Source of the DNA: Octopus sinensis
Taxonomy: Eukaryota
Assembly (NCBI RefSeq): GCF_006345805.1
Contig: NC_043002.1
Coordinates: forward strand, 56,482,001 to 56,546,000
Length of the DNA stretch: 64,000 bases
Reading direction: 5' to 3'
In this document: piece after piece, positions 4,135-59,600 of the stretch
How the letters are laid out: each line of letters opens with the position of its first letter
Position numbering within the stretch: position 1 is the stretch's first letter
Translations under genes and position numbers: made by a program
Notes under the pieces: model-generated
Told to the model about the DNA's origin: nothing
The model's input: only the letters and a program-made list of their open reading frames with translations
Database searches by the model: none

Positions 4135-6730
4135 TTAAAATAATATATAATAATGAAATTATTGTATACAATGCTCAGGTGCACCACAACTTGTCAAAAG
4201 TGCGTATAAAGCATATGCAGTAATGTAGAAATGTTTGGAAAATGAACAGTCTATGAGTCAGATACATGCTTGCGTGTGTAAGAAGGGGAGAAAATCAGGT
4301 GTAGTGTTGGTGAATCTCAGGTAGCATGGAAGTTTTGATGGATGCAGTGCTCTGGCAACTAACAACTGATGCCAGCAGTTTGTTCCGTGTTTTAGCAACT
4401 CTTAGCATTAAAAAATTGTTTCCAAAAGTCATGGGAGCTGTGCTGCTTTCTGACTTTGTAAACATGCCCACAGGTGTTAGACAGGTGGTGTTTGAAAAGG
4501 TGCTCAGATGGTTAATAATTTTATGGGTGTCTGCCAAGTCAGCTACCAGACGTTGGAGTTTCAATGTATCAATGCCCAGGGAAGTAAGGCGTTCAGAATA
4601 TGGCAAATGCCTGATGGAGGGTATTCTCTTGGTTGCATGTCACTGCATGGTTTCCAGAGGATTAATATCCTGGGCAAGATAGTGGTTCCAGACCGGTGAG
4701 GCCACACCATAGCTATATAAAGCCTCAGATAGATAGCCGGAGAGCAGCTCACAAAGGACTTGGTTAGTGATGCCAAGATCCTCAGCAGCCTTTTTGGGAA
4801 TTTTTGCAATGTGTTTTGTCCAACGCAAATTGCTGTTGACAATAATGCCCAGGTCATGTTCACAAGAAGACTTTTTGAGATTAATGTTGTGGAGGGAGTA
4901 AGTAGAGGGATTAGTGTTGTGGAGGGAGTAAGTAGATGCTGGGTTTTTCCTCCCAAAATGCATGGTGGTACATTTGTCCACAGCCAGCTTGAGTTGCCAA
5001 TCCATGATCCACTGCTGCATTGTGTCCAGGTCTGATTGCAATAAAGATCTATAGTGTACAGGATCTGTCCTCTTTATTTTGAGGTACAGCTTGATGTCAT
5101 CTGCATATTTCATCACTGTGGCATTCTTTAAGTTGGCATCTATGTCATTAACATATGCAACAAATAAGAGGGAGCCAAGAACAGATCCCTGTGGTACACC
5201 AGATGTCATCTCATAGAGTGAAGATGCTGTCTTAGAACTGTGACAACCTCTTTTCGGCCGATAATGAAGGCCTTCAACCAGTTATAGAGATCATCTCTTA
5301 CACCCATTGCAGAGAGTTTCACCATAAGTCTTTTGTGTGGCACAGAATTAAAAGCCTTAGCAAAGTCCAGGTAAACAACATCCACCCAGGAGCTGCCATT
5401 AGTGATTCGGGTAATGTCCTCAAGAAACTCGATAAGTTGATTACAGCAGCTGGCGTTAGGAATAAATCCAAATTGTGATGGCTGGATGAGGCTGTGAGAC
5501 TTCCAGAAGTTCCAGAGGGTTTCTCTGACACAGGATTCCATCAGTTTGGTGATGCAGCTAGTAAGACTGACGGGGCAATAGTTGACAGGCAATGAGCGGT
5601 CACTTTTTTTGAACAGAGGGATAATACTGGCAGTTTTACACTGCTCTGGAGTAACACCATTGTCAAGAGAGAATTGAAAGAATAGTGAAAGTTGGTTGAG
5701 AAGAAAGTACCCACCGCATTTGAGAAGTAGGTATGTAACACCATCGAGACCAGGATATTTATTCTTAAGGTGGGATTGTAGCATTGCTGGCGTAACATTT
5801 TGATGGAACATTTTGATCTTCGATAGTAAAGATACCTGCATAGCATCCAGCAATGATTTCTGCACATTCTTTGGGATTGTCAGTAATCTGTCCTGTGTGG
5901 GGATTACGAAGGGGGCCAACTGGAGAGTGAGGTCTCTGTTTTGAATGTACATACTTCCAGAAAACTTTGCTGTCAGGGTTGGTTGCTATGTGCTGTTCAA
6001 ATTCAAGCACTGCCTTTTTTGTCACCTGCTTGAGATGGTTGGATGAGCTATTGCGCTTTTTCCTGTCGATCTCTGATTTGTGCATTTTGTATTCCTGTTC
6101 AGCATTACAGCGTTCTTTCCTGGCAAGTCGGACTGCTGCAGTCTCCCAAATTGCACTATTGGGTGTTTTTTTGTGTTTGCGTGGTACCGATGCTGCACAT
6201 GCCATCCATAATGAATTCAGAATGTTCTGTAGTATAGTGTTCACATCTCCAGAGGCATGAAATTCAAACCAGTTTGGGCGCCGCAGCTCGGTACAATAAG
6301 AGTTCCAGTCTGCTTTATTCCAGTCAAAGCAGGCAGTTTGAAGATGGTTGTGGTTTTTGTTACAACCAATCAGAGACAAGTTGGCCATGATCATTCCATG
6401 ATCAGAATCACCTAAAGGTTCTTCAGTAGTGACACTAATAATTGTTTCAGGAGAAGCGGTAAATAGCAGATCCAAAGTGTTGTTACCCCTTGGGGGAGGT
6501 AACAACTTGGAACCAGTTTGAATTCAGCACCAGTTCAAGGAAATCGTCTGCACTTTGCAGTCAACAGAAGGCCTCTCAGTCAATCTCAGGGAAATTGAAG
6601 TCTCCTGCAATATAAACATAAGTTGCTGTTTTCATGGCTGCAACTCTGAGGATATCAAAAAGTTGTGTGTCTTGACGATAATTTGGTGGGCGGTAAACAG
6701 CTCCAAGTAGAAGTGTTGACATGGTCATGT
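4135..6730 (-). mobile_element. CR1/L2-group LINE, 5'-truncated ORF2 (APE endonuclease end + RT), frameshifted
   Basis: GAVYRPP and IAGDFN near 6600-6720; NTLDLLFT..GDSDH (ORF 5765-6505); QFGF..YLDFAKAF (5206-5952); GVPQGSVLG..YADD (4640-5209); C-terminus at 4295; (ATT)-rich tail near 4140. Confidence 0.92.
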
Positions 6731-10544: not shown

Positions 10545-10745
10545 GGCACAAGGCCAGCAATTTCGGGTTGGGGTCAGTCAATTACATCAACTCCATTGCT
10601 CGACTGGTGTTTATTTTATTGACTCCAATGGGAGGAATGGCTAAGTTGATCTTGGCAGAATTTGAAGTCTGAACATAAAGACAGGCAAAATGCTTCTAAG
10701 CAGTTTGCCTAGCATGCTTACAATTCTGCCAACTCACCACTTTAC
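10545..10745 (-). mobile_element. tRNA-derived SINE, family B (Nin/Deu-like domain)
   Basis: Reverse complement of the family B head and 3' end; compare the intact copy at 35352. Confidence 0.7.
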
Positions 10746-10861
10746 ACACACACACACACACACATACACACACACGCACACACACACACACATACTTGGA
10801 AATGGATGCGTGGTGTTCAATCTAATAATAACATAATATATATATGCATACACACACACAC

Positions 10862-11399: not shown

Positions 11400-11688
<289 letters not shown>

Positions 11689-11690
<2 letters not shown>

Positions 11691-11869
11691 CATAGGAGTG
11701 GCTGTGTGGTAAGTAGATTGCTTATGAACCACATGGTTCCAGGTTCAGTCCCACTGTGTGGCACCTTGGGCAAGTGTCTTCTACAATAGCCTTGGGCTGA
11801 CCAAAGCCTTGTGAGTGGATTTGGTAGACAGAAACTGAAAGAAGTCTGTTGTATATATGTATATATGTG

Positions 11870-11931
<62 letters not shown>

Positions 11932-12140
11932 ATATATGTTTGTGTGTCTGTGTTTGTCCTCCCCAACATCGCTTGACAACCGATGATGGTGTGTTTATGT
12001 CCCCGTAACTTAGCGGTTCAACAAAAGGAACCGATAAAATAAGTACTAGGCTTACAAAGAATAAGTCCTGGGGTTGATTTGCTCGACTAAATGTGGTGCT
12101 CCAGCAGGCCACATTTAAATGACTGAAAAGAGTAAGAATA
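11689..12140 (+). mobile_element. SINE family A, full length
   Basis: Head ggagtggctgtgtggtaag..ggttcagtccc, core gcaccttgggcaagtg, central (TA)n, tail ..ccagcaggcc..aaatgactgaaa. Confidence 0.9.
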
Positions 12141-13170: not shown

Positions 13171-15019
13171 AATGTGATGAGAATACTTACTTAACATTAA
13201 ATCGTGTGGCTAAAAAGTTTGCTTTGTAAGCATCACTTCCTGTTTCCAAATGCCTCCAGTCTGTCAAGCAATGAACAGCTTGGACATGGTTATGTGGAGA
13301 ATTGGAAATGAATGACATTGTTTGAACAATGAACCTTTGTTTACCAAAGTCTGTGCAACATGTCAAATCATTTCAAGAAGCCTGGATATGCTCTTATGAA
13401 GGATTGCAAGGAAATCACACCACCTGTACAAACAGTGAGGCATTTGATTTCAGCCAGGGAACACATGTGAAGATGAGGTGAGATACAGAGTCTCCCACAT
13501 GAAGTTGCACACACACACGCACTCACACACACACACATAAAGAAACAAACTCACAAACACACATATACACACAAATTCACAAACACACATACACACAGAC
13601 TTAATAAGTGAATCCAGTTTCAATGCTGTTTTTAGGACAGATTCTTGGAAGTTTGGCAAGTGGTACCAGTGTCTTCATGTAGCTAAACTTTTGCTTTTTT
13701 TGTTCCAGTTACCATTATGGTTGGCTAATGCACATTGCATGTTCACTGCTGAAACATTTATCAGGAATGGTGAAACCTCCACTACTCCTGTCTTTGTAAC
13801 TTAAAAAAATTATTTTTGAAAATTACTTTTAAACATCAGTGATTAAGGTTTAATAAAAGTGAATCCAATGGGTTTAGTCCCATTGCATGGCACCATGGAC
13901 AAGTGTCTTTTGCAATAGCACTGGGCCAACCAAAACTTTGTGAGTGGATTTGGTAGACGGAAACTGAAAGAAGCCCTTCACGTGTGTGTGTGTGTATTGC
14001 AGCCTTAGCAGTGCTCTACCATCCAATTTAGATTCTCATCCCCTTACCTTGAGAGTATGCCCTGGTGCATAGCCATCGTCTTTCCCTCTCTCTTGTTCTC
14101 TCTCATTCTTGAGCACTCTCTCTCTCCCTCCGACTGTGGTAACCATGTATTGTCCTCTACAGCAAGACATCTGCCTCTAACCCTCTCTCATTGCCTGGCA
14201 CAAATCCACCTCCTCGAGTACTCCTCAGTTTAAAAGGATCTTTGTCTTGCAAGTTATTTGGTGATCTTGCCAGTGCTGGTGCCATGTGAAAAGCACCGAG
14301 CCTAAACTGTAAAGTGGTTGGCATTCGGAAGAGCATTCAGCTGTAAAAACCATACCAAAACAGACCTTGCCAGTGCGGGTGCCAGGTAAAAAGCAGCCAG
14401 TACACTTTGTAAAGTAGTTTTCATTAAGAAGGGCATTGAGCAATAAAAACAGACAAAGGAAAACAACATGCTAAAATAGACAATGGAAGCCTGGTGTAGC
14501 TGTCTGGTTTGCCAGCTCTGGTCAAGCCATCCACTCCATGCCAGCATTGTAACCCATCACTGTTTGACAAGTGTTGGTTTGTTTACATGCCTGTGACTTA
14601 ACATTTTGGCATAAGTGTTTGATAGAAGCACCAGACTTAACAAAAAAAAAAAAAAGTACAGGAGTCAGTTTGTTTGATGAAACTCTTCAAGGTGTTGCAC
14701 CAGCATGGCTGTAGTTCTCAAAGAAGTAAAAGATAAAAGATTATTTTAATTTTTTACAATTTTTTACAATCCCTTCTTTTCTATTTCCCGTTTATAAAAC
14801 TTGTTATACATTTTCCTCTTTAACTTTTTTGAAATATTTTTTTCTGAATTTCATGTTTGAAACTTAAGAGCTTACGACAATAACATAAAAAAACCAAAAA
14901 AATACACTTTTTAGGAAGAAAAAAAGTTATGGGTGTTCTTATTATGAAACTCCACTGTCTTCAGAATATTTTGCATTTAATGTGTCCAGTTGTTAGTTTT
15001 ACATGTCTTTTATCTTTTT

Positions 15020-15790: not shown

Positions 15791-17202
15791 AGAATGACGA
15801 TCCCAATCCTATTGGATGACTTTATAGCTTTAAAAGAATGAAACTAAAATTTTCATTTCTAAGAATTATTCCTCTCAATAGACCCAGATTCCATTTTCTG
15901 TTTTGTGTCTTTTTTCTTTTCGTTTTTTTCTTTCTCTGAATGTGTCCATATCTTTTGTTAATATTAGTAAACCACTCTTCTATCTCTTAACATTTCTCTT
16001 GCTCTCTCCACTTGCCCTTTCTTCACAGACACAGAACTGAGATTAGTTTGGTGCTGTAGTAACAAATCAACTACTAAAACAAATTGTCCACAGATCGAAT
16101 CCTCCTCTAGCAATAAAATAAGATACACGTTTTCCTTTACAATTTTCCCTCATCCCTTTCTTGGCCTGGCAGGCCTACTTTTCCTGAACTCAATCTCTGC
16201 CTTTATTTCTTGCCTTAACAGCTCTCTCTTATATACCTATATAGACATTTTTACAAACAACGTTTTTCCAACAGACACTTTCTCCAAATAAAAATCCTTT
16301 TACTTCTTCTTCTTTTTATTAATCTCCATCTATCTATCTATCTATCTATCTATCTAATCTATCTATCTATTTTTCAGTCTCCTATACTTCCATCTTGCTT
16401 TGTCTTTCCTCCCGTCGCCTCTCTCTGCCATTATCTCTCTATCGTATATATTTCTATTACGTGCTTTCATTTCCATAATCCAATCCATCTCTTTCACGTC
16501 GACTCTCTCCCTCTCTCATTGAACTAGTTCCTCTCTCTCTCTCTCTCTTTAATATCCTTCTTCCAGGCGTTTATATCAAGTTTTCTAATTTGTTCCTCCC
16601 TTCACTCTCCCATTCTTTCACTACTCATCTTTTAACTCTTTCTCTCATCCTTTCCTTTCCTCTTCTTTCGATTATTAGCATTCTCTTTCTCTATTTCCCC
16701 ACGTCTTTCTATCTATCTATCTATCTATACATACATACGTATTTCTATCTATCCATTTACCCATCACCATATCTCTGTCTCTCTTCTGTGACTCAAATCC
16801 CTTTACTTCTCTATTTTCTTTTCTATTTTGTGGGTTCACCCTTCCCCTTCTCCACCTGTCTGTCTCTCTACATATGTATGTATGTATGCATGTATATTTC
16901 GTTAACTCTCCCGCTGTGTGATCAAGGGCAGAGAACTTTTACACACACACACCACACACACAAATAGAGAGATAGAGAGGTAGATAGACAGATAAATAGA
17001 TAGATAGATGGTATTTCCCTTCTATACTAAACTCTTTCTCAACTGTCCATCAAATACCAGGTGATTTTATAAAAACAAACCATTTTTTAACATATCTCCA
17101 CAAATATCCTTAACAATATGTCTATATATATATTTTATATTACTCTCAGCTTTAGCTCTCCCTCACTCTAGATAGCTATCTAATATATATATATATATAC
17201 AT

Positions 17203-17247
<45 letters not shown>

Positions 17248-17363
17248 CATACACAGATATATATATACACACACACATATCTATCTGTCTTATATATATA
17301 TAGATATATTATATATATCATTTCTGAGCCATTGAACGACGAACAGAGGGGAGACTATCTCTT

Positions 17364-17443
17364 CTCTCCAGATGGCGCTCGCTCTTGTTCCCTCCCTCTT
17401 TACCTCTGCCTTTCTTTGTCGTCCTCTCTCTCTAGATGGCGCT
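17364..17443 (+). promoter_or_regulatory. Two co-oriented CTCF/YY1-like motifs (CTCCAGATGGCGCT and CTCTAGATGGCGCT)
   Basis: Motifs at 17364-17377 and 17430-17443 in a CpG-retaining region. Motif resemblance only. Confidence 0.4.
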
Positions 17444-17894
17444 CTCCCTTTCTCCCTCTCTTTTCTCCCTCCTTTTTTCTTCTTCTCCCTCTCTATCACA
17501 TTTCCCTCCTCACTCATTTACCTCCCTCTCTGTTTGTCTCTCTTTCTACTATTCTCTCTCTCTCTCTTTCCCTCTCTCTTTCTACCATTGAACTCTTTTA
17601 TTCGTCTTGCAGCAACATTTCCAGTTCACCCTTCATGGAAGGGACTGAACGACGAAGAAGAATAAAGGAAAATATATCCTCATAAACATCCGTATTCAAA
17701 ACAAATACGACGACCGGAGCGAAAAAGGAAGGTGAGACCAAGCACCAGATACAATGTGAGACACAATAACATTTACATGTTGAAACAGTTTCTTTTTCTG
17801 TCATTGCTTGGTCATGTAAAACAGACATGAGTCGGAAAGCTCTACCAATATTATTAGACAGTCTATGCACACACACAACCCCCCCCCCACACAC

Positions 17895-17905
17895 ACATGT
17901 ATGTA

Positions 17906-17958
<53 letters not shown>

Positions 17959-18274
17959 ACATATGTATGACAGCAGTGTTGTGTGATATATGTATTGTAT
18001 ATAATGTGTTATATATATATTGTACGTTGTAATGTGTGATATGCTGTGTATATATGATGATGAATGTGTCTATTGTATGTTTGTTGTGTGTGTGTGTATT
18101 TATGTATATATATATATATATCGTACATATGTCTGTTGTATATATTGTATGTTGTGTATATTGTATATATGAATATCTATATATATGTGTATGTATATAT
18201 ATATATATATATGTATATATATCTATATGTGTATGTATATCTGTATATATATATGTGTGTATATATACATATAC

Positions 18275-18328
<54 letters not shown>

Positions 18329-18350
18329 TATATATATATACACATACGTA
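17895..18350. repeat. Compound (TA)n/(TG)n/(TGTA)n microsatellite
   Basis: Directly visible. Confidence 0.95.
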
Positions 18351-18626: not shown

Positions 18627-18683
<57 letters not shown>

Positions 18684-24714: not shown

Positions 24715-25355
24715 GCCACTCCCAAACAGTTGAAAGTATTCGGGGAGAGGTAGACCCAGGAAGACATGGGATGAGGTAGTCAAGCATGACCATCGAATGT
24801 TGGGCCTCACAGAGGCAATAACGAAAGACCGAGATCTCTGGAGATATGCTGTGACTGCAAAGACCCGACAAATAATGTGAGTATGGCTGCTTCCTGCACC
24901 AGTTTCGCATAGCCCCAACCCATCCAAAGTATCTTGGATTGCAGAACGACTTGCTGTGCTTGAGGAGACCTATTGAGTCAAGTACATCAACATCAAAATA
25001 AATATCAAATGGAAATAGTAGTTGTGATACCTGTGCCGGTGGCACGCAAAAAGCACATCAGAACGTGGCCAATGCCAGCACTGCCTTGACTGGCTTCTGT
25101 GCCGGTGGCACATAAAAAGCACCAACCGAACGTGGCCGCTGCCAGCCTCTCCTGGCACCTGTGCTGGTGGCATGTAAAAAGCACCCACTACACTCACGGA
25201 GTGGTTGGCGTTAGGAAGGGCATCCAGCTGTAGAAACACTGCCAGATCAGACTGGAGCCTGGTGCAGCCTCCTGGCTTCCCAGACCCCGGTCGAACCATC
25301 CAACCCATGCTAGCACGGAAAACGGATGTTAAACAACAACAATGATGATGATGCT
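24715..25355 (+). mobile_element. RTE LINE 3' end
   Basis: GRGRPRKTWDEVVKHDHRMLGLTEAITKDRDLWRYAVTAKTRQ followed by the 3' UTR and tail. Confidence 0.9.
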
Positions 25356-26587
25356 AGTTTCAAGTTCAATTCCTTTTGTGTTTATCACTTGGAGAACAGA
25401 CTCTTATTAGACTTACCCTAGCTATACTGAATAAATAATCTCTGCATCACTTGTATACAATGACACACACAGTTATAGAATCTGCTGACATCACCACTGC
25501 TTGTAGAAACATTTTAGGATTTTGCATCTTTTACTATTTTCTGTGGTTTGTGTTTAATTCATTTCTACCTCAATTGTCAAAAGATATCTTTGTGGTCACT
25601 GTGATGAAATAATTCTGTTAGGAGACTAGACAGCCATTCATCATTGAATGTCTGTGTTTCATGCTGGCATGGGTTGGCTGGTTTGAGAGGACCTGATGGG
25701 CCCAAGGACTGCGTCATGCTCCAATTGTCTTATTTTGGCATGGCTTCTATGGCCAGATACCCTTCTTAATGTCAAACACTTTACAGCAAACACTAGGTGC
25801 TTGTGCTAGTTTTGTACCACAAACACTAGTGAGGTCTCCATGCAGCTTGTAAGACCACAGACCTTGAGAGAGGTCATTTTATGCTAGGGTACAAGGAGTT
25901 AAAATTTGAGTGAAGGTTCCAGAATAGCTGTAGAGAAGGTACATGATTATTCACATGTAAGAAGAGGGTGGTGGGGTTGTTCAGGGTTGACCTGGCAAGA
26001 GAAGGGCTTGGGGTGTTTTCTTCTTCATACTGGTATTGTTTGAGTGAGCAGCCATCCACAGATCTCGGTTCTATATCAGTTTGTGGGTTTTTTTTTTGGT
26101 TCTGCTGATCTACTTGGGAATGGCAGTATTTCCAGCAGTATGGTTTTTCAGAATTGACTCGCCTTCCCATCATTAACTACAGGTTCCTTGGTTCAGTGAC
26201 ACCAGCTCCAAACAAGTTAAATTGAGCCAGACGACATTTAAGAAGGCCTAGAGAAATTGAATAGGCATTGTTGTCAGCAATGGTAGCATTAACCAACCTT
26301 AAGACCCCTATAGCATTTCACTGAGGCTCAACACAAGGATTTATTTAAAAAGAAAAAATTTGCAACATTTTGTTTGCTTTAATAAGTAAATGTTTTTGTT
26401 TATTTTGCAAAACAATTTTGTTTTTTATTTCTCTCTTTCTCTCTACATAGGTTTGAAATTTTTATTTTTCTCTTCATATGTGCAATACTTAATTTTTGAA
26501 ACTAATTTATTTTGAAGGGAGAAAGAAGACTGGCTGTGAAAAGAAGCAGCTGTATTCAAGTGTGTTGTGTTAGAAATCTCTGCACCA

Positions 26588-28402
26588 ATGCCAACTAAAA
26601 AATCTCAGAAATCTAAAAAAAGGAAGAAAACTCCTCATTGCAAAAATGAGGCTGATTCCAGTGATGTAGGGGCCAAAATTGAGCATAATCAAGAGACTGA
26701 AGGTGCAATGAAAGAGTCTGACCAAAAACTAGAGAAGACTATCAGATGTGATTTTTGTCACGAAGAGTTTAACCTGAAGAGTCAGTTGCGATCACATCAC
26801 CTGCTTCATGTTAGTTGCAGACCTTACCGATGCAATTACTGTTCAAAAGGATTTCTTAAGTTAGGGGACCTAACTAAACATGAACGGTCTCATACAGGGG
26901 TTAAACCTTTTAAGTGCACCTTCTGTGACAAAGCATTTACAGAATCTGGGACTCTTACTGTGCACACACGCACTCATACCGGAGACAGGCCATTTAAATG
27001 TACATACTGCACAAAAGCTTTCATTCAGTCGAGTGACTTGAAGAAGCACACTCGTATTCATACAGGTGAGAAGCCATACAAGTGCTGCTACTGTGATAGG
27101 GACTTCTCTGAGTCCAGTTCATTATCGCATCATTCTAAATTACATTTAAATGAACCAACATTTCAATGTATATACTGCAACCAAAAGTTTAAAACATTGA
27201 CACAGCTTGATGCACACAGTCATACTCACAGTGAAAATAGAATACACAAATGTGGTTATTGTGACAAGTCCTTTGCTCATCTTGGTAACCTTGCAGTGCA
27301 TACAAAGACTCACATAGAAAAGAAGCCGTTTACATGTGACTTCTGTCCTAAAACATTCTTTAGGACTGGGGATCTCCTAAAACACATCCGTACACATACA
27401 GGAGAGAAACCATTTGCATGCAGTTATTGTGATAGAAAGTTTACTGAATCTGGAACATTAAATGTACATTTACGCCGTCATACTGGTGAGAGGCCTTATG
27501 TGTGTCCTATCTGTACAAGGGCTTTTATTCAATCAAGTGATCTTAACAAGCACAAAAAGACACACAGAATTAATGACCAATATACACTCAACGAATATTT
27601 AGGTTTGCAACAGGTGCAAAATTCAATGCCAGTCAATGAGTCTTCTTATATTGAACACACTAAGATTATTTCAAGGACTTCTTTAACAGAAACCACAGGT
27701 TTGCCTCAGTTTAACGAGTCAGAGACACGAATCTATTCGTGTAAGATGTGTGATGAGAAGTTCCCTACAGAAAACGATCTGTCTGCACATATTGTGTATC
27801 ACCAAGAAGTTGCTTGCAACTCTGTTAATTCTGATTACACTCAACCATATTCCTGTGAATACTGTGAAAAAACGTTTTCACAACTGTCTAATCTTGCTGT
27901 TCATACAAAGACCCATCTTGGAGGTAAACCGTATAACTGTGATTTTTGTGATAAAGTCTATATGCGTCCCAGCGACTTGAACAAGCATATGAGATATCAC
28001 ACTGGCGACCGCCCCTATAAATGTGAGATTTGCCAAAAAGCTTTTACTGAGTCTGGTTCATTGAAGATCCACCAGCGAAGCCATACTGGGGAAAGACCTT
28101 ACAAATGTAGCCTGTGCCCCAAGGCATTTGTACAGTCGAGCGACTTGAAAAAACATATGAGAATTCATACAGGGGAAAAACCTTACAACTGCAAATTTTG
28201 CTTGAAGACATTTTCTGAATCTAGCTCTTTAACCGTCCATATGAGAAGTCATACGAAATACCGACCGTATAAGTGTAATGCGTGTGATAGAGCTTTTATA
28301 CAGTCTGGGGATTTAAAGAAACATCTGAGAACCCACACTGAAGAAGCTACAAGCTATTGCGACGGATATAGGGCTGACACTTCTTTAAGCATGCCAGTTT
28401 AA
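26588..28402 (+). CDS. C2H2 zinc finger protein, 604 aa, 17 fingers, single coding exon
   Basis: Uninterrupted ORF; 17 C-x2-C-x12-H-x3-H fingers, many with TGE(K/R)P-type linkers; basic N-terminal KKSQKSKKRKK. Likely acceptor ctctacatag| at 26450; AATAAA at 28495 and 28560. No KRAB, BTB or ZAD domain visible. Confidence 0.95.
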   Translation: MPTKKSQKSKKRKKTPHCKNEADSSDVGAKIEHNQETEGAMKESDQKLEKTIRCDFCHEEFNLKSQLRSHHLLHVSCRPYRCNYCSKGFLKLGDLTKHERSHTGVKPFKCTFCDKAFTESGTLTVHTRTHTGDRPFKCTYCTKAFIQSSDLKKHTRIHTGEKPYKCCYCDRDFSESSSLSHHSKLHLNEPTFQCIYCNQKFKTLTQLDAHSHTHSENRIHKCGYCDKSFAHLGNLAVHTKTHIEKKPFTCDFCPKTFFRTGDLLKHIRTHTGEKPFACSYCDRKFTESGTLNVHLRRHTGERPYVCPICTRAFIQSSDLNKHKKTHRINDQYTLNEYLGLQQVQNSMPVNESSYIEHTKIISRTSLTETTGLPQFNESETRIYSCKMCDEKFPTENDLSAHIVYHQEVACNSVNSDYTQPYSCEYCEKTFSQLSNLAVHTKTHLGGKPYNCDFCDKVYMRPSDLNKHMRYHTGDRPYKCEICQKAFTESGSLKIHQRSHTGERPYKCSLCPKAFVQSSDLKKHMRIHTGEKPYNCKFCLKTFSESSSLTVHMRSHTKYRPYKCNACDRAFIQSGDLKKHLRTHTEEATSYCDGYRADTSLSMPV

Positions 28403-29085
28403 ATGTTTACTACAAATTAACTGACCCCAAAATGCTTGGATAACATAAAAAAAGAATATCTTGCAGTGTTATTGTCAAGCAAATTAAATTAAAAAATAAA
28501 AGAAATTAAAGACTTTTTCCGGCACAATATTTGGGATCCTACTCTTGAACAATAATTTCAATAAATAATCCATTTGCTAAAAGTCAAAGCCCCAAAGAAA
28601 AGAAAAACCCAAACCTTGACCTTTTTGCATGTCAAACTGTGATAGGACTTTTCTAATTCAGTTCTGATCAAAAAACAAATTCAACAGGACTATTTTCATC
28701 TCACTGTCTAATTATTCCACTTAAATAAAAAACAAAATTATATTTATTTTGTTTAATTTATATTAATTCTAATTCTTTTGCTGGACAGCAACACTTACGT
28801 TTTTGTCCAGTTGAATAGTTGCCTACCCTTTTTTAAAAATAATTATTTAAAATAAAAAGTCGCAGTGAGTTGACCAAAAAATGGTAGAATCTTGAGATTT
28901 AATGTCTTATTTTGTTTGATCTTTCTTAAATACAGAGACACAACACAGCAGAAATTTGATTTAATGAAAAACAAACAAATGAAGAACTATTTGTACTTCA
29001 TTTGGCTACTATGAGGTACTTTGTTTTAATGTACAGGGTTACTATAGCAACTTGGTCATGTCACAAAACTATTTTCTCCCTAATA

Positions 29086-29254
29086 GGCATGGCTTTGTGG
29101 TAAGAAGTTTGCTTCCCAACCACATGGTTCCAGGTTCAGTCACACTGTGTGACACCTTGAGCAAGCATCTTCTACTATAGCCTCAGGCCAACCAAAGTTT
29201 TGTGAGTGGATTTGGTAAATGGAAACTGAAAGAAGCCCAGCATCTGTATGTGTG

Positions 29255-34046: not shown

Positions 34047-36897
34047 ATCATCATCATCGTTTAACGTCTGCTTTCCATGCTAGCATGGGTTGGACGATTT
34101 TGACTGAGGGCTGGCGAACCAGATAGCTGCACCAAGCTCCAATCTTGATCTGGCAGAGTTTCTACAGCTGGATGCCCTTCTTAACGCCAAGAGTGTAGTT
34201 GGTGCTTTTACGTGCCACTGGCATGGGGCCAGTAAGGCGGTACTGGCAATGACCTCACTCGAATCTTTTTACACATGCCACCTGCACAGGTGCCAGTAAG
34301 GCGACATTGGTAATGATCACGCTCGAATGGTGCCGGCACAGAGCAAGTTGGCTGCTCTGGCAACGATCATGTTCGGATGGTGCTCTTGGCACCCTACAAG
34401 CACAGGTACAAGTGCCAGTAAGGCGATGCTGGTAACGATCACACTCGAATGGTGCCCTTTTATGTACCACTAGCACGGAAGCTGGTTAGCCGCTTTGTCA
34501 ATGATCACCCTTGTATGGTGCTCTTTGCATCCTGCTAGCACAGATGCTAGTCATTGAATTTGATTTTGTTTTCACTTGCCTCAACAGGTCTTCACAAGAA
34601 GAGTTTAGTGACCAAAGAAGGAAAAGGTACGCATAAGTGGGCTGGTTACGCTCCTGGCATAGGCCACAGGTTATGGTCTCATTTGGCTTGCTGGGTCTTC
34701 TCAAGCACAGCATATTTCCAAAAGTCTCGGTCACTAGTCATTTCCTTGGTGAGGCCTAATGTTCAAAGGTTGTGCTTTACCACTTCGTCCCAGGTCTTCT
34801 TATGTGTCCATAGCTTACACTGGGTACATCTTATAGAGTTTCTACCAATGCCTCTACTACAGATTGAGCAGGGCCATCTACCTGAAGGGATTTGTGGTTT
34901 GCCTGCCTTCCTACTTATTAGGACTTTGGTTTTAGCAAGGTTGATTCTAAGGCCCTTTGATTCTAATCCTTGTTTCCACACTTGAAACTTCTCCTCTAGT
35001 TCTGATAGTGACTCAGCAATTAGAGCAAGATCATCAGCATAGAGGAGCTCCCAGGGGCATCCTGTCTTCAATTCCTCTGTTATTGCTTGGAAGGCTATGA
35101 TAAATAGGAGGGGGCTGAGGACTGAAACTTGGTGGACCCCTACCTCTACCCTGAATTCTTCAGTGTATTTGTTGCCAACCCTCACCTTACAGCGTCCCTG
35201 TACATGGCTTGCACAGCTCTCACTAACCATTCATCTATCCCTAGTTTCCTCATTGACCACCAGATAAGGGATCAGGGGACCCTGTCAAAGGCTTTTTCCA
35301 TGTCAACAAAAGCCAGGTACAGGGGCTTATCTTTGGCTAGCTATTTCTCCCGAAGGCGGCGAGCTGGCAGAACCATTAGCATGCCGGGCGAAATGCATGG
35401 CCGTATTTCGTCTGCCGTAACGTTCTGAGTTCAAATTCCACTGAGGTCGACTTTGCCTTTCATCCTTTTGGGATCGATTAAATAAGTACCAGTTACACAC
35501 TGGGGTCGATGTAATCGACTTAATCTGTGTGTCTGTCCTTATTTGTCCCCTCTGTGTTTAGCCCCTTGTGGGTAGTAAAGAAATAGGTATTTCTCCTGCA
35601 GCTGTCTTACTGCTACACCAGTCATTGGGTATGACTCCTTCGTGTATTACCTGGTTAACTATACAGGTGACTAGGCTATAGCTGACACTGCCAGATATTT
35701 TGAGCATCTCTGGTAATTCCAGATCGGCCTGGGGCTTTCCCTGTCTTCATACTTCTAATTGCCTTATCTACCAAGGTACCTCTGTTGGGTTGACATTCGG
35801 CAGACTCTCTTTCTCCCATTCATTTTCTTTATTCAGCAACCGTTCATAATGGCGTCTCCAAACCTCTCTCTTTGCATCCTCATTTAGCACAAGTGAACCA
35901 TCATCCATGCGAACACATTTCTCTCCTACTACATCATGATTCTCTCTCACACACCGTCTTGCAATATGAAATACCTCAAGTCTTTGGTCCTCATGGCGCA
36001 GAACATTGGCAAATTTTTTCTTATCTGTTTCCCCTCTGGCTAAATAAACCTGCCTCCTAGCTTCCCTTCTGGCAGTCTGATATACTTCCCTGCTACCACT
36101 GCTCTCCCAGTCCTTCCAAGCCTGTTTCTTTTGTCTAATAGCCTTGTCAACAACATTGTTCTACCACCACGTTATTTTGGGTAGAGAGGGGACTTTGCAC
36201 CATCCACAGATCTGGTTGGTGGCCCTTAGCAGGTTGTCCCGTAGGAACCTCCAGTTGTCTTCTATACCATGTGAAGCTATATCCCCTTCTATTTTGTCAA
36301 AGGCTTCGAGTAATATGTCTCTAAATATCTGTTCATTTGCAGGATCTTTAAGTCTCTAGATCCTTCTTGTTGCTGGGCATCCATTTAGCCCTGATCCTGA
36401 AGTCACTAACTACCAGTCTATGTTGTGGGATACATTCTTCGCCTGGGAAGGTTTTGGCATTTATAAGCAGCCATCTTTCCTTTTTTTTTGGTGAGGATGT
36501 AGTCAATCTGACTAGTGTGTCTGCCTGAGTGGTAGGTGGCTAGCAGATTTTCTGAAGTTAGTATTGCAAACCATAAGACCATTTGTATCACAGAACTCCA
36601 GCAGCCTGGTTCCCTCCTCATTGCGAGAGCCAATACCGTAGCCTCCATGTATGCCATGGAAGCCCTCGACATGTTGTCCAACATGTCCATTGAAGTCACC
36701 AGCCACAAAGAGAAGGTCTCTGTCATTTGTCAATGCGGTAGTCTGCAAGAGGGTGTCATAGAATTAGTCTTTCTGTCTATCAGGTAGCCCTGGCTGAGGG
36801 GCATAGGCCGAGATAATGGTTGCTAACCCATGATGGAGCACTAATCTAATCTTAAGTATTCTGACTACCTCAATTACCTTATCTACCCATTTCTCCA
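34047..36897 (-). mobile_element. RTE-clade LINE (EN-RT), 5'-truncated, internally deleted, split by a SINE
   Basis: EN: ISAYAPQ, VAGDFNGHVG, QIDYIL. RT: FVDMEKAFD, VGVHQVSVLSP, LYADD. (CAT)n tail at 34047. Confidence 0.93.
35352..35596 (+). mobile_element. Young long-form SINE family B nested in the RTE RT domain, 13-bp TSD
   Basis: A-box-like gctggcagaacc and B-box gagttcaaattcc. TSD tag(c/g)tatttctcc at 35338-35350 and 35584-35596. Confidence 0.92.
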
Positions 36898-41759: not shown

Positions 41760-42955
41760 CATCATCATCATTGTTTAACGTCCACTTTCCATGCTAGCAT
41801 GGGTTGGACGATTTTGACTGAGGGCTGGCGAACCAGATGGCAGCACCAGGCTCCAAGTGGGCGCTTTCTACATGCCACCGGCACAGGGGCCAGTAAGGTG
41901 GTACTGGCAATGACCTTGCTCGAATCTTTTTACACATGCCACTGGCACAGGTACCAGTAAGGCGATGTTGGTAACAATCATGCTCAAATGGTGCCCTTTT
42001 ACGTGCCACTGGTACGGAAGCCAGTTGGCTGCTTTGGCAATGATCACGCTATGATAGTGCTCTTGGCACCCTACAAGCACAGGTACAAGTGCCAGTAAGG
42101 TGACTCTGGTAACAATCACACTCAAATGGCACCCTTTTATGTGCCACTGGCACGGAAGCCGGTTAGCCACTCTGTCAAACGATCACACTCGTATGGTGCT
42201 CTTTGCACCCCGCTAGCACGGATGCCAGTCGAATTTGATTTTGATTTCACTTGCCTCAACAGGTCTTCGCAAGCAGAGTTTAGTGATCAAAGAAGGAAAA
42301 GGTATGCATAAACGGGCTGGTTACGCTCCTGGCATAGGCCACAGGTTATGGTCTCATTTGGCTTGCTGGGTCTTCTCAAGCACAGCATATTTCCAAAAGT
42401 CTCTGTCATTAGTCATTTCCTTGGTGAGGCCTAATGTTCAAAGGTCATGCTTCATCATCCCAGGTATACCTCTTCCACAGGTTCCCTCAACCGCTAGGGT
42501 GTGGCACTTTTTCACACAGTTATTCTCATCCATTCTTGCCACATGACCATACCAGCGCAGTCGTCTCTCTTGCACACCACATCTAATGCTTCTTAGGTCC
42601 AACTTTTCTCTCAAGGTACTTACACTCTGTCGAGTATGCACACTGACATTACACATCCATTGGATCATAATGGCTTCATTCCTTGTGAGCTTATGCATGT
42701 CCTCAGCAGTCACAGCCCATGTTTCACTGCCATGTAGCATGGCTGTTCATACACAAACATCATACAGTAACCTTTTACTTTGAGTGAGAGGCCCTTTGTC
42801 ACCAGCAGAGGTAAGAGCTCTCTGAGCTTTGCCCAATCTATTCTTATTCTAGCAGCTACACTTTCAGCGCACCCTCCTCCGCTACTGACTTGGTCAACTA
42901 AGTAACGGAAGCTATCAACTACTTCTAGTTTTTCTCCCTGGAATGTGGCGGAAGT
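41760..42955 (-). mobile_element. RTE LINE, 5'-truncated 3' portion
   Basis: VDSFRYL..RELLPLLVTKG..HGSETWAV..RLRWYGHVARM followed by the 3' UTR and (CAT)n. Confidence 0.92.
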
Positions 42956-56651: not shown

Positions 56652-59600
56652 TCATCATCATTTAATGTCTGCTTTCCATGCTGGCATGGGTTGGGCAGTT
56701 TGGAATTGGCAAGCTGTAGAGCTGCCCCATACTCAAGTCTGTTTTGGCATGGTTTCTATGGCTAGATGCCCTTCTTAACACCAACCACTCAGAAAGTGTA
56801 GCGGGTGCCTTTTACACGTCAATGGTACAGGTGCTTTTACATATCACCAACACTGGCCACAATTATGCTTTCACTTGGCTTGACATGTCTTCTCAAGCAC
56901 AGCAAATAGCCAAAGATTTCGATCACTTCATCGCCTCTGTGAAATTCCACATTCAAAGATCATGCTTCACCACCTTGTCCCATGTCTTCCTGGCTCAGCT
57001 TCTTCCACAGGTTCTCTCCACATTTAGAGATCAGCACTTCTTTACGCAAATGTCCTCATCCACACACATCACATGACCATACCAATTCAGATGCCTTTCT
57101 TGCACACCATATCTGATGCCTCTTATGCCCAGTTTTTCTCTCATTGCACATCCGGTGAAGCATACTAGATTCATTTCTTTCAAGCCTTCACATATTCTCT
57201 GCAACCACAGCCCATGTTTTACTGCTGTGTAGTATGGCAGTTCGCACACAGGCATCATACAATCTGAGGAAGAGGCCCTTTGTTACCAACAAAGGTAGCA
57301 GCTCTCTGAACTTTGCTCAGCTTATTCTTATTCTAGCAGCTACGCTTTTGGAGCATCCACCTCTGCTACTGACTTGGTCACCTGGATAATGAATGCTATC
57401 AACTATTTCTAGGTATTCCCCCTGGCATTTGATGGAGTCTATTTTCTGTACATTTCTAGTGTTTATTATACCTGTACATCTACCACACACAAAGACTATT
57501 TTCCCTATTAACCTTCATCTGATATTGCTGCACTTCTTATGTGTCCATAGCTTACACCAGGTACACCTTATGGAGTTTCTACCTGTGTCTTTTCTAAATA
57601 TCGAGCAGGGTCACTTACCTGGAGGGATTTGTGATTTGTGTGCTTTTCCACTTACTAAGACATTGGTGTTTGCTAAATTAACTCTAAGGCCCTTTGATTC
57701 TAGACCTTGCTTCCACTTCTGAAATTTTTTTCTCCAGTTCTGGTAGTAATTCAGCTTTAAGAACATATTCAGCAGCATAGAGGAGCTTCCAGGGACAGTC
57801 CAACTTAAATTCTTCTGGAAGACTATGATGAACAAGTGGGGCCCAAGGACTGATCCTTGGTGAACTCCTACTTGTACACTGAATTCATTGCTATACTCAT
57901 TGCTAACCATTACTTTACTGACAGCGTTCCTGTACATGGCTTGTACAGTTCTCACCAGCCACTCCTCTATCCCTAGTTTCTGCAATGACCACCAGATAAA
58001 GGAGTGGGGGACCTTATTGAAGGCATTCTCCATGTCAACAAAAGCCAAGTACAGAGGTTTATTTTTGGCTAGGTACTTCTGCAGCTGCCTTGCTAGAAAT
58101 ATAGCATCAGTGGTGCTTCTCTCTGGCACAAAACTAAACTGCATCTAGACTAACTTTCTTCCTAATTAGTCAGGCTAAGACCCTCTCCTTAACTTCCATC
58201 ACCTGATCCTGCAATTTGATACCACTGTAATTATTTCTAAGGCATCACCATTACCTTTGTAGCAGTTAACTATGGTGCTTCTAAATCAGCCATTGGGTAC
58301 AACTCCCTTGTGTACAACCTGACTGACTATATGCGTGATGAGACCATAACCCACACTGCCAGATATTTTCAGCATCTCAGCAGTGATTCCTGATGGGCCA
58401 GGAGCTTTCCTGGTCTTCACATCTTTCATGGCTTTATCTACCATGCCACAGTCTATTCAGATAGCTGGTTCCTCTGTTGGACCCACTTTAGGCAGAGTCT
58501 CCTTCTCCCATGAGTTCTTTACATTTAGCAACCTTCCGTAGTGGTACTTCCAAGCCTCTTGGCAGAGTGAACCATTATCCATGCAAATGCACTTCTCTAC
58601 AACAGCATCACAATTTTCCCTGGTACACTGTCTTGCAAGCTAGAACACCTCAAGCTGCTGGTCTTCACATCGCAGATCATTGGCAAACTTCTTTCTTTCT
58701 GCTTTTCGCCCTGGCTAGGTATATCTACCTCTTAGATTCCCCTCTAGCTACCTGATATAGTTCTTTGCTATTGTCACTCTTCCAGTCCTGCTTCTTTGCT
58801 CTAATTAACAGCCCTGTTAACTACACTGCTCCACCACCATGTCACTCTAGGTGGTCTGGTTGGGACTTTGCATAAGCCACAAATTTGGTCTATGGCTCTC
58901 AGTAAGTTGTCTCATAGGAATTTCCAGTTATTCTTCTTGTTACATATCTGTAACTCCTCCTTCTCCTCCTCATTTTCATGAAATGCTTCAGTTAGGGACA
59001 TCTTTACATCTCTGACTATTCAGAGGATCCTTAAGCTTCCAGGTCCTTCTTTTCCAGATTGATTTGTTTCTTGGAACCTTCTGGCCTGTAGTCTGAAATC
59101 AATAATGAGTAATGTATGCTGAGAGGTACATTCTTCACCAGGGAAGGTCTTTATCTTTATGAGCAACCATGAATCACACTTCCTGGTGAGAATGTAGTCA
59201 ATCTGGCTAACATGGTCACTGGATTTATAAGTTATCAGGTAATTGGCTGGTTTCTTAAAGTTGATGTTGCAGATTATTAGGTCATTTGCATCACAGAATT
59301 TCAGCAGCCTTGTTCCCTCCTCAATTCCATGCCCCCTCCCCATGTAATCCATAGAAGACACCTGGGTGCTACCTGACATGTCCATTGAAATCACCAGCCA
59401 TAAAGATAAGGTTACTGTCATTTGTTTTTGAGCTACCCTGCAGAAGAATGTCATAGGAGTGATCCTTTTGTTCATTTGGTAGACCTGGTTGGGGGGTGGG
59501 GGCATAGGCAGAGATGATTGTTGCTGTGCAATTCTGCAAAACTAGTCAAAGCTTAAGTACCCTATCACATACTCTGATTACTTCAATCACCTTATTGGCC

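What the first reader, a model, noticed from the sequence alone, without database searches (positions are those of the whole stretch)
26588..28402. 17-finger protein with an alternating two-finger code: a candidate microsatellite reader
Seen: helix positions (-1,+3,+6) alternate between (Q/R/K,D,K) fingers (2,4,8,10,13,15,17) and (E,T/S,V/I/H) fingers (3,5,9,14,16), in three blocks. Two of the blocks are led by an (H/Q)L(G/S)NLAVH finger (7, 12). Helices are near-identical (QSSDL x3, ESG(T/S)L x3, ESSSL x2) while codons and finger backbones have diverged, which implies selection on specificity rather than recent duplication. Established: each finger reads about 3 bp; Asp+3 favours C and Gln-1 favours A; coleoids have a large C2H2 expansion. 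Inference: an ABAB code reads a 6-bp period. That fits a dinucleotide repeat such as (CA)n (ACA/CAC) or a hexamer. Three spaced arrays could bridge several tracts in a microsatellite-rich genome.
Basis: partly seen in the sequence, partly recalled or inferred. Interest (0 to 1): 0.7.

Follow-up and report, generated by a model that had tools for sequence, protein, structure and literature searches.

The report
Octopus zinc-finger protein, three repeated modules
An intact octopus gene encodes a 17-zinc-finger DNA-binding protein whose DNA-contacting residues alternate between two types and have been kept by selection, but the standard recognition code predicts three copies of a GC-rich ~9-bp site, not a CA microsatellite.

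Summary
Window 26588-28402 (+) is an intact 604-codon single-exon CDS, called identically on Octopus sinensis chromosome CM016864.1. The alternation is not chance: permutation p about 4e-4, and 0 of 346 comparison poly-ZNF proteins show more than one such adjacency, against 9 here. It is not recent duplication either. Same-class fingers are 39-69% identical in DNA, and codon sharing at identical residues is at the random level.

The class signal sits only at helix -2, -1, +3 and +6, the DNA-facing positions, so long-term selection on specificity is well supported.

The pattern is not plain ABAB. The first A finger in each block has Arg/Lys at -1 and the later ones have Gln, so the protein is three copies of a 3-5 finger module. 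The published recognition code gives about 5'-GCA-nnC-GCG(-nAA)-3' per module, containing CpG. (CA)n fits poorly because Lys+6 is invariant.

No ortholog could be retrieved and nothing was tested experimentally. It is an unusual but ordinary-class C2H2 protein with no effector domain.

The parts
26588..28402 (+). Complete CDS: 604 codons plus stop, a single coding exon encoding a 17-finger C2H2 protein
   Evidence: identical gene call on O. sinensis CM016864.1; Pfam matches are zinc-finger families, with zf-C2H2 and zf-H2C2_2 far above their cut-offs
26420..26450 (+). Putative 3' splice acceptor: polypyrimidine tract then AG at 26449-26450. This implies a 5'UTR intron. An in-frame TGA at 26537-26539 rules out an N-terminal extension within this exon
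   Evidence: read directly from the sequence; inference only, no transcript data
26588..26740 (+). N-terminal 51 aa with a basic KKSQKSKKRKK stretch (NLS-like); no recognisable effector domain
   Evidence: 13 K+R in 51 aa
26747..26809 (+). Finger 1 (helix LKSQLRS), outside the A/B scheme, followed by a non-canonical linker
26831..27145 (+). Module 1, fingers 2-5: A2 (KLGDLTK), B (ESGTLTV), A1 (QSSDLKK), B (ESSSLSH), joined by TGxKP/TGxRP linkers
27167..27229 (+). Finger 6 (TLTQLDA), with non-canonical linkers on both sides
27251..27565 (+). Module 2, fingers 7-10: N-type (HLGNLAV), A2 (RTGDLLK), B (ESGTLNV), A1 (QSSDLNK)
27566..27733 (+). 56-aa finger-free spacer (58 aa between the ligand-to-ligand bounds of F10 and F11); no detectable decayed fingers
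   Evidence: 169 of 500 shuffles score at least as high
27740..27802 (+). Finger 11 (TENDLSA), isolated, followed by a 17-aa spacer
27854..28336 (+). Module 3, fingers 12-17: N-type (QLSNLAV), A2 (RPSDLNK), B (ESGSLKI), A1 (QSSDLKK), B (ESSSLTV), A1 (QSGDLKK)
28495..28565 (+). Two AATAAA hexamers (28495-28500 and 28560-28565) 90-160 nt after the stop; candidate polyadenylation signals in an A-rich stretch
   Evidence: read from the sequence; weak evidence

Best explanation
This is a functional single-coding-exon gene of Octopus sinensis. It encodes a nuclear, sequence-specific double-stranded-DNA-binding C2H2 poly-zinc-finger protein with no known effector domain.

Its DNA-reading surface is three anciently duplicated copies of one module: [N-type finger: H/Q..N..V] - [A2: R/K..D..K] - [B: E..T/S..V/I] - [A1: Q..D..K] (- B - A1). 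The fingers of each module are joined mostly by TGEKP-type linkers (TG-type between the A and B fingers). The modules are separated by atypical fingers and linkers and by a 56-aa spacer.

Each module is predicted to wrap the major groove and read about 9-12 bp, roughly 5'-GCA-nnC-GCG(-nAA)-3'. The A fingers give the specific contacts: Lys+6 to G, Asp+3 to C, Gln-1 to A or Arg/Lys-1 to G. The B fingers give one specific contact, Glu-1 to C or T/5mC, plus 'versatile' small or hydrophobic contacts.

The protein would therefore recognise a reiterated or clustered GC-rich, CpG-containing site. Either one module acts as the core and the others add affinity and dwell time, or all three engage neighbouring copies.

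Shown: gene integrity, architecture, non-random alternation, and selection on the contact positions.
Inferred: DNA binding, the motif, and the multi-site mode.
For: - Intact ORF with all 68 zinc ligands and the Phe/Tyr and Leu core residues present in all 17 fingers, even though the internal repeats are saturated at synonymous sites. This indicates long purifying selection.
- Pfam zf-C2H2 at 271 bits and zf-H2C2_2 at 329 bits.
- The closest solved structures are DNA-bound arrays: ZFP568, Aart, CTCF and PRDM9.
- TG-type linkers lie within the A/B blocks: all of F2-F5, F8-F10 and F13-F16, with LGGKP at F12-F13 and TKYRP at F16-F17. The F1-F2 and F5-F8 junctions are non-canonical.
- The class signal is limited to helix -2, -1, +3 and +6. 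These are among the base-contacting positions listed in PMC12264921.
- Code assignments: G is read by Arg/Lys/His, A by Asn/Gln, C by Asp/Glu, and small or hydrophobic residues are versatile. Designed modules QSGDLRR = GCA and RSDDLVR = GCG.
- All three modules give the same predicted core.
- Basic N-terminal stretch.
Against: - There are no binding data, no trained predictor and no orthologs (all failed to return any close relative).
- The PWM uses weights I chose from the qualitative code. Simple codes are known to be context-dependent (PMC4330361), and long arrays often use only a subset of their fingers, non-additively (PMC10287918).
- Glu at -1 is a weak and uncommon determinant. It occurs in 4.7% of background fingers.
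- The module register is resolved only weakly by the backbone. Offsets 5, 6 and 11 are not clearly better than 12 or 13.
- No good match to the predicted site occurs in the 64-kb window, though none is expected by chance either.
Confidence: 0.55

Rival explanations
1. One reading: the alternating fingers read a dinucleotide microsatellite such as (CA)n as ACA/CAC triplets, and the three arrays bridge several tracts.
For: - Asp+3 reading C and Gln-1 reading A fit xCA, and Glu-1 reading C fits the 3' C of CAC.
- (CA)n scores above random under the heuristic model: 3.6 bits against a random mean of -9.3, sd 4.7.
- (CA)n tracts are common in the window: 739-802, 10744-10792, 13508-13597 and 18630-18683.
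- Precedent from my own knowledge: ZSCAN4 binds CA/TG repeats. ZBTB43 acts on purine/pyrimidine dinucleotide repeats that form Z-DNA (abstract listed).
Against: - Lys+6 is invariant in all seven A fingers and predicts a 5' G, not A.
- Three A fingers have Arg/Lys at -1, predicting G, not A.
- Class B has Thr/Ser at +3, not the Asn/Gln expected for the central A of CAC.
- (CA)n is about 19 bits below the model optimum.
- The N-type fingers, with Asn+3 reading A, do not fit the repeat register.
Confidence: 0.07
2. It reads a true 6-bp-period tandem repeat (a hexamer satellite of the type (nnCGCR)n, for example GCATTC-like). Module 3 (five alternating fingers) covers about 2.5 repeat units. Modules 1 and 2 engage further units.
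For: - The A/B alternation gives a 6-bp predicted period, and hexamer arrays score 12-13 bits.
- Linker position 4 also alternates, K after A and R after B. This suggests an old two-finger unit.
Against: - A1 and A2 differ (GCA against GCG), so the period is not uniform.
- The N-type and atypical fingers interrupt the arrays.
- TRF finds no period-6 array in the window.
- GCANNCGCR occurs once, against 2.07 expected.
Confidence: 0.15
3. The class B fingers act as low-specificity spacer or bridging fingers, as TFIIIA ZF4/ZF6 and CTCF ZF8 do. Only the A fingers then read bases, giving GCR triplets spaced 6 bp apart.
For: - B fingers carry small or hydrophobic residues at +3 and +6, which give 'versatile' contacts. 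Spacer fingers exist, and their features are not yet predictable.
Against: - B fingers have standard C-x2-C and H-x3-H spacing, and four of the five are followed by a TG-type or TKYRP linker (F5 is followed by LNEPT). Known spacer fingers have expanded ligand spacing.
- Glu-1 and Thr/Ser-2 are strictly conserved in all five B fingers, which argues that they have a specific role.
Confidence: 0.15
4. The conserved helix surfaces serve RNA or protein binding, not dsDNA recognition.
For: - There is no effector domain, and some poly-ZNFs bind RNA or protein (my own knowledge).
- zf-C2H2_jaz scores 97 bits overall, but no single stretch passes.
Against: - The class-specific positions are the canonical base-contact positions.
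- TGEKP-type linkers are typical of DNA-wrapping arrays (my own knowledge).
- The best structural relatives are DNA complexes.
Confidence: 0.08

Closest known systems
ZFX / ZFY / ZNF711 'two-finger repeat' proteins
   Same: A long C2H2 array in which odd and even fingers form two alternating sequence classes. These were proposed long ago to be distinct DNA-recognition motifs (PMC11030341). In ZFY the extra fingers add affinity only when the core site is intact (PMC10287918).
   Different: - In ZFX/ZFY the alternation lies in the scaffold: H-x3-H against H-x4-H spacing, plus backbone signatures. Here all 17 fingers are H-x3-H, and the alternation is confined to the base-contact positions -2, -1, +3 and +6.
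- There is no acidic N-terminal activation domain.
- No sequence relationship beyond the generic C2H2 fold was seen.
Generic polydactyl C2H2 proteins of lineage-specific expansions (vertebrate KZFPs; coleoid C2H2 expansion, PMC12513265)
   Same: - A single large exon encoding many tandem fingers with TGEKP linkers.
- Octopus origin.
- Best database matches are such proteins, at 29-44% identity.
   Different: - No KRAB, SCAN, BTB or ZAD domain.
- Not in a tandem ZNF cluster within 64 kb.
- In typical expanding ZNFs the helix contact residues are the most variable positions (my own knowledge). Here they are the only positions that define the repeat classes.
- 0 of 346 such proteins show the alternation.
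PRDM9-type arrays encoded by a coding minisatellite
   Same: Repeated fingers with recurring helices. A PRDM9 homolog had the only comparable period-2 score in the background set (P0003).
   Different: PRDM9 finger repeats are near-identical in DNA and evolve by concerted evolution (my own knowledge). Here nucleotide identity between same-class fingers is 39-69%, synonymous sites are saturated, and TRF detects no repeat in the CDS.
Simple-repeat-binding zinc-finger proteins: ZSCAN4 on CA/TG microsatellites, ZBTB43 on purine-pyrimidine repeats, ZBTB48/ZBTB10/ZNF524 on TTAGGG, and GAGA factor and CLAMP on GA repeats
   Same: ZBTB10 and ZNF524 are discussed in the review for their cross-strand contacts, and ZBTB43 appears. 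The repeat targets of ZBTB48, ZBTB10 and ZNF524 are from my own knowledge.
   Different: - These proteins use a few fingers, not a long alternating array (my own knowledge).
- No homology or shared domain was found.
- The predicted triplets here (GCA, GCG, nnC) do not match CA, GA, TA or TTAGGG repeats.
Designed modular zinc fingers (Barbas modules, Zinc Finger Tools)
   Same: The A1 helix QSGDLKK/QSSDLKK is nearly the GCA module QSGDLRR. The A2 helices (R..D..K) parallel the GCG module RSDDLVR.
   Different: Lys replaces Arg at +6. A2 lacks Asp+2. The fingers are natural and their context is untested.

Membership tests
Classical (Krueppel-type) C2H2 zinc finger array | Ligand spacing C-x2-4-C-x12-H-x3-5-H | tested here: met
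   All 17 fingers are C-x2-C-x12-H-x3-H
Classical (Krueppel-type) C2H2 zinc finger array | Conserved hydrophobic core: an aromatic residue before the helix and Leu at +4 | tested here: met
   F/Y and L are present in all 12 A/B fingers and in the other five
Classical (Krueppel-type) C2H2 zinc finger array | Pfam PF00096 / PF13465 above the gathering score | tested here: met
   271 bits against a cut-off of 25.2, and 329 bits against a cut-off of 40
Classical (Krueppel-type) C2H2 zinc finger array | TGEKP-type inter-finger linkers | tested here: met
   8 of 16 junctions are TG-type and 10 of 16 end in K/R-P. They lie within F2-F5, F8-F10 and F12-F17
KRAB-, SCAN-, BTB- or ZAD-zinc finger families | N-terminal effector or oligomerisation domain | tested here: not met
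   Pfam finds zinc-finger families plus two sub-threshold chance hits, and no effector domain. The N-terminus is 51 aa, and an in-frame stop lies 49 nt upstream of the ATG
ZFX/ZFY/ZNF711 two-finger-repeat family | Alternating H-x3-H and H-x4-H spacing in odd and even fingers | tested here: not met
   All fingers are H-x3-H. The defining feature is taken from PMC11030341
ZFX/ZFY/ZNF711 two-finger-repeat family | Large acidic N-terminal activation domain | tested here: not met
   The N-terminus is 51 aa and net basic
Coleoid-specific C2H2 expansion (PMC12513265) | Phylogenetic placement inside a cephalopod-specific clade of paralogs | not testable with these tools
   No cephalopod protein was returned by any search
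Coleoid-specific C2H2 expansion (PMC12513265) | Location in a tandem cluster of ZNF paralogs | tested here: inconclusive
   There is no other C2H2 unit in any frame of the 64-kb window, and the neighbour is THOC7. Not all expansion members are clustered, so this does not settle membership
Minisatellite-encoded (PRDM9-like) finger arrays | Near-identical DNA repeats of 84 bp | tested here: not met
   Nucleotide identity is 39-69%, and TRF finds no array in 26588-28402
Microsatellite- or simple-repeat-binding zinc finger proteins | Demonstrated preferential binding to a simple repeat | not testable with these tools
   Only a heuristic code model was possible. It disfavours (CA)n, (TA)n, (GA)n and TTAGGG

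The most novel reading that the evidence does not exclude
The protein is a natural 'repeat reader'. Three conserved copies of one finger module, with an internal two-finger (6-bp) sub-period, evolved to bind a reiterated CpG-containing element: either a hexamer-period array (nnCGCR)n or three closely spaced GCAnnCGCG cores. Its Asp-on-cytosine contacts would make binding sensitive to CpG methylation. That would make it a cephalopod example of a zinc-finger array whose internal periodicity mirrors the periodicity of its DNA target.
Probability: 0.2. Interest if true: 0.55.

Novelty: new member of a known kind. Interest (0 to 1): 0.3.

Why it matters
The DNA targets of cephalopod C2H2 proteins are essentially unknown. 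The 2025 survey of the expansion names the identification of their binding sites as the next step.

This gene is a clean test case. The contact residues of 12 fingers have been held in a repeating pattern long after all neutral similarity was lost, so the specificity must matter. The protein also divides naturally into three similar modules that can be assayed separately.

If the three modules bind the same core, it would show how internal duplication of a finger module builds avidity for reiterated sites. If not, it would be a useful counter-example to recognition-code predictions. Either way it is an incremental advance, not a new principle.

Tried and rejected
(1) Ortholog and paralog retrieval failed five ways.
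- The whole-protein word search was swamped by generic ZNFs at 44% identity or less, with no cephalopod entries.
- The linker plus F11 query shared no words with anything.
- The exact sequence is absent from the 15-billion-protein set.
- The exhaustive representative search with F10-linker-F12 was swamped by giant ZNFs whose scores sum over up to 61 stretches.
- A crafted helix-only query gave a best hit of 44 bits, and none of the 81 hits has the signature.

(2) Recent tandem duplication or concerted evolution as the source of the pattern: rejected.

(3) Chance arrangement of the classes: rejected.

(4) The 58-aa F10-F11 gap as two decayed fingers: no support, since 169 of 500 shuffles score as high.

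(5) N-terminal extension or a hidden effector domain: an in-frame TGA lies at 26537-26539, and no credible acceptor lies between it and the ATG.

(6) Solved structures with the same helices: none, only generic arrays.

(7) Predicted sites in the window: GCANNCGCR occurs once against 2.07 expected, and the best PWM hits score 11 bits or less of 15-23 possible. This is uninformative.

(8) Block register from the backbone alone: weak. Offsets 5, 6 and 11 are not clearly better than 12 and 13. The module model therefore rests mainly on the A1/A2 distinction and on the F4-F15 (79%), F3-F9 (68%) and F7-F12 (61%) similarities.
Full report
WHAT IS THERE.
Window 26567-28402 (+) is the only long ORF in its neighbourhood. 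From the first ATG (26588) it encodes 604 aa. The same 604-aa product is called as a single gene on chromosome CM016864.1 of assembly GCA_006345805.1. That assembly is Octopus sinensis.

An in-frame TGA lies at 26537-26539. A polypyrimidine tract followed by AG lies at 26420-26450. Together they suggest a 5'UTR intron and a single coding exon, but this is inference without transcript data.

Pfam reports zinc-finger families plus two sub-threshold chance hits. There is no KRAB, SCAN, BTB or ZAD domain. The flanks are rich in transposable elements and microsatellites. THOC7 lies downstream on the opposite strand. No other C2H2 unit exists in any frame of the window.

CHECKING THE OBSERVATION.
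Regex parsing gives 17 fingers, all C-x2-C-x12-H-x3-H.
- F1-F10 are contiguous, with 7-aa linkers.
- A 58-aa gap follows, then F11 alone, then a 17-aa gap, then F12-F17.

- Class A (Q/R/K, D, K): F2, 4, 8, 10, 13, 15, 17.
- Class B (E, T/S, V/I/H): F3, 5, 9, 14, 16.
- (H/Q)L(G/S)NLAV fingers: F7 and F12.

The order is non-random.
- There are 9 A/B adjacencies and no A/A or B/B adjacency, reached by 379 of 10^6 label shuffles.
- The period-2 helix score exceeds all 117 scorable background poly-ZNFs, z = 3.0.
- None of 346 retrieved poly-ZNF proteins (6,029 fingers) has more than one A/B adjacency.

IS IT SELECTION OR RECENT DUPLICATION?
- Same-class fingers are 39-69% identical in DNA.
- TRF sees no repeat in the CDS.
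- Where two same-class fingers share an amino acid, they share the codon 188 times out of 456. Codon usage alone predicts 200. Synonymous sites are therefore fully randomised.
- Backbone identity is the same within classes (27%) and between them (28%).

I therefore scored all 28 positions.
- Class-discriminating signal exists only at helix -2, -1, +3 and +6, plus weakly at linker position 4 (K after A, R after B).
- Position -2 was not used to define the classes. It is hydrophobic in all 7 A fingers and Thr/Ser in all 5 B fingers, exact p = 1/792.
- Positions +1, +2, +5 and the rest of the backbone carry no class signal.
- The four discriminating positions are among the base-contacting positions listed in the current structural review (-8, -7, -4 and -1 in its numbering).

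Together with 68 intact zinc ligands, this is good evidence for long-term purifying selection on binding specificity.

FINER ANATOMY.
The alternation is not a plain ABAB.
- The first A finger of each block (F2, F8, F13) has Lys/Arg at -1, L/F/M at -2 and a non-Ser residue at +1. I call this subclass A2.
- The later A fingers (F4, F10, F15, F17) have Gln at -1, I/V at -2 and Ser at +1. I call this subclass A1.
- Blocks 2 and 3 both begin with the NLAV finger, and each is preceded by an atypical T..Q/D..A finger (F6, F11).

The best inter-finger similarities follow this register: F4-F15 79%, F3-F9 68%, F3-F14 64%, F7-F12 61%. The backbone alone resolves the register only weakly.

TG-type linkers lie within the A/B blocks. 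The junctions F1-F2, F5-F6, F6-F7 and F7-F8 are non-canonical.

The protein is best described as three paralogous copies of a 3-5 finger module with an internal two-finger sub-period.

LIKELY MECHANISM.
The scaffold is that of DNA-wrapping arrays. The closest solved structures are ZFP568, Aart, CTCF and PRDM9 bound to DNA.

I applied the published qualitative code: Arg/Lys/His read G, Asn/Gln read A, Asp/Glu read C, Glu also reads T/5mC, and small or hydrophobic residues are 'versatile'. I also used the designed-module assignments QSGDLRR = GCA and RSDDLVR = GCG. This gives:
- A1 = GCA
- A2 = GCG
- B = nnC
- N-type = nAA or nAG

Reading from the C-terminal finger to the N-terminal finger:
- Module 1: 5'-nnC GCA nnC GCG
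- Module 2: 5'-GCA nnC GCG nAg
- Module 3: 5'-GCA nnC GCA nnC GCG nAA

All three share the core GCA-nnC-GCG, with a CpG at each B-to-A junction.

Under a PWM whose weights I chose myself from that code (a heuristic, not a trained predictor), the scores for module 3 out of 22.8 possible bits are:
- (CA)n 3.6, (TA)n -10.6, (GA)n -2.7, TTAGGG 1.4
- GCAnnC-type hexamers 12-13
- random 18-mers -9.3 +/- 4.7

So (CA)n is a partial match through the xCA of the A1 fingers only. The invariant Lys+6 and the Arg/Lys-1 fingers argue against it.

Long arrays commonly use a core subset of fingers, with the others adding affinity only on an intact core. Simple codes are context-dependent. The motif is therefore a low-confidence prediction. 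The three-similar-modules statement is more robust, because it rests on the residues themselves.

COMPARISON WITH KNOWN SYSTEMS.
- The nearest conceptual relative is the ZFX/ZFY/ZNF711 two-finger repeat. There the alternation is in the scaffold (H-x3-H against H-x4-H) and comes with an acidic activation domain. Both features were tested here and are absent.
- PRDM9-like coding minisatellites are excluded by the DNA divergence.
- It is a classical C2H2 poly-zinc-finger protein on every defining feature.
- Whether it belongs to the coleoid-specific expansion (PMC12513265) could not be tested, because no cephalopod protein was returned by any search.
- The idea that repetitive finger arrays arise to read repetitive DNA is already in the literature.

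VERDICT.
- The inference of selection on specificity is supported.
- The microsatellite reading, (CA)n in particular, is not supported by the recognition code.
- The pattern is better explained as a triplicated module predicted to read a reiterated GC-rich, CpG-containing core.

This is a new member of a known kind with an unusually tidy internal organisation. Interest is moderate to low until binding data or ortholog comparisons exist.

Noticed in passing
window 4640-5952 (-), 34763-35230 (-), 57611-58144 (-): Fragmented reverse-transcriptase ORFs (Pfam RVT_1, E 2e-14 to 3e-12), i.e. decayed non-LTR retrotransposon copies flanking the gene.
   Followed up: partly
window 14266-14450, 25029-25185, 41870-41989: TRF units of 62-100 bp share a 'GCCGGTGGCACGTAAAAAGCACC'-like core in both orientations. 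This is probably a dispersed SINE-like family. A similar-looking element lies at about 29060-29230, just downstream of the gene.
   Followed up: no
window 11404-11947, 17183-18340, 739-802, 10744-10792, 13508-13597, 18630-18683: Very dense (TA)n, (TATG)n and (CA)n microsatellites. The 16-18 kb bin has GC skew -0.45.
   Followed up: no
window ~31566 onward (-); L001 14979-21815: The downstream neighbour on the opposite strand is a THOC7-domain gene (PF05615). It is a useful synteny anchor for finding orthologs.
   Followed up: no
window 27566-27733 (+): The spacer between F10 and F11 is almost exactly two finger lengths, but it shows no residual finger similarity: 169 of 500 shuffles score as high.
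   Followed up: yes
linker position 4 of fingers 2-16 (within 26831-28336): Linkers after A fingers are mostly TGxKP, and those after B fingers TGxRP (same-class identity 0.39 against 0.11 between classes). This is the only backbone trace of a two-finger unit.
   Followed up: partly
protein databases (not the window): No octopus or other cephalopod protein, not even this protein itself, was returned by any of five protein look-ups. Yet the gene is on record in the contig index. The protein databases searched may not hold cephalopod proteins, so the absence of relatives says little.
   Followed up: partly
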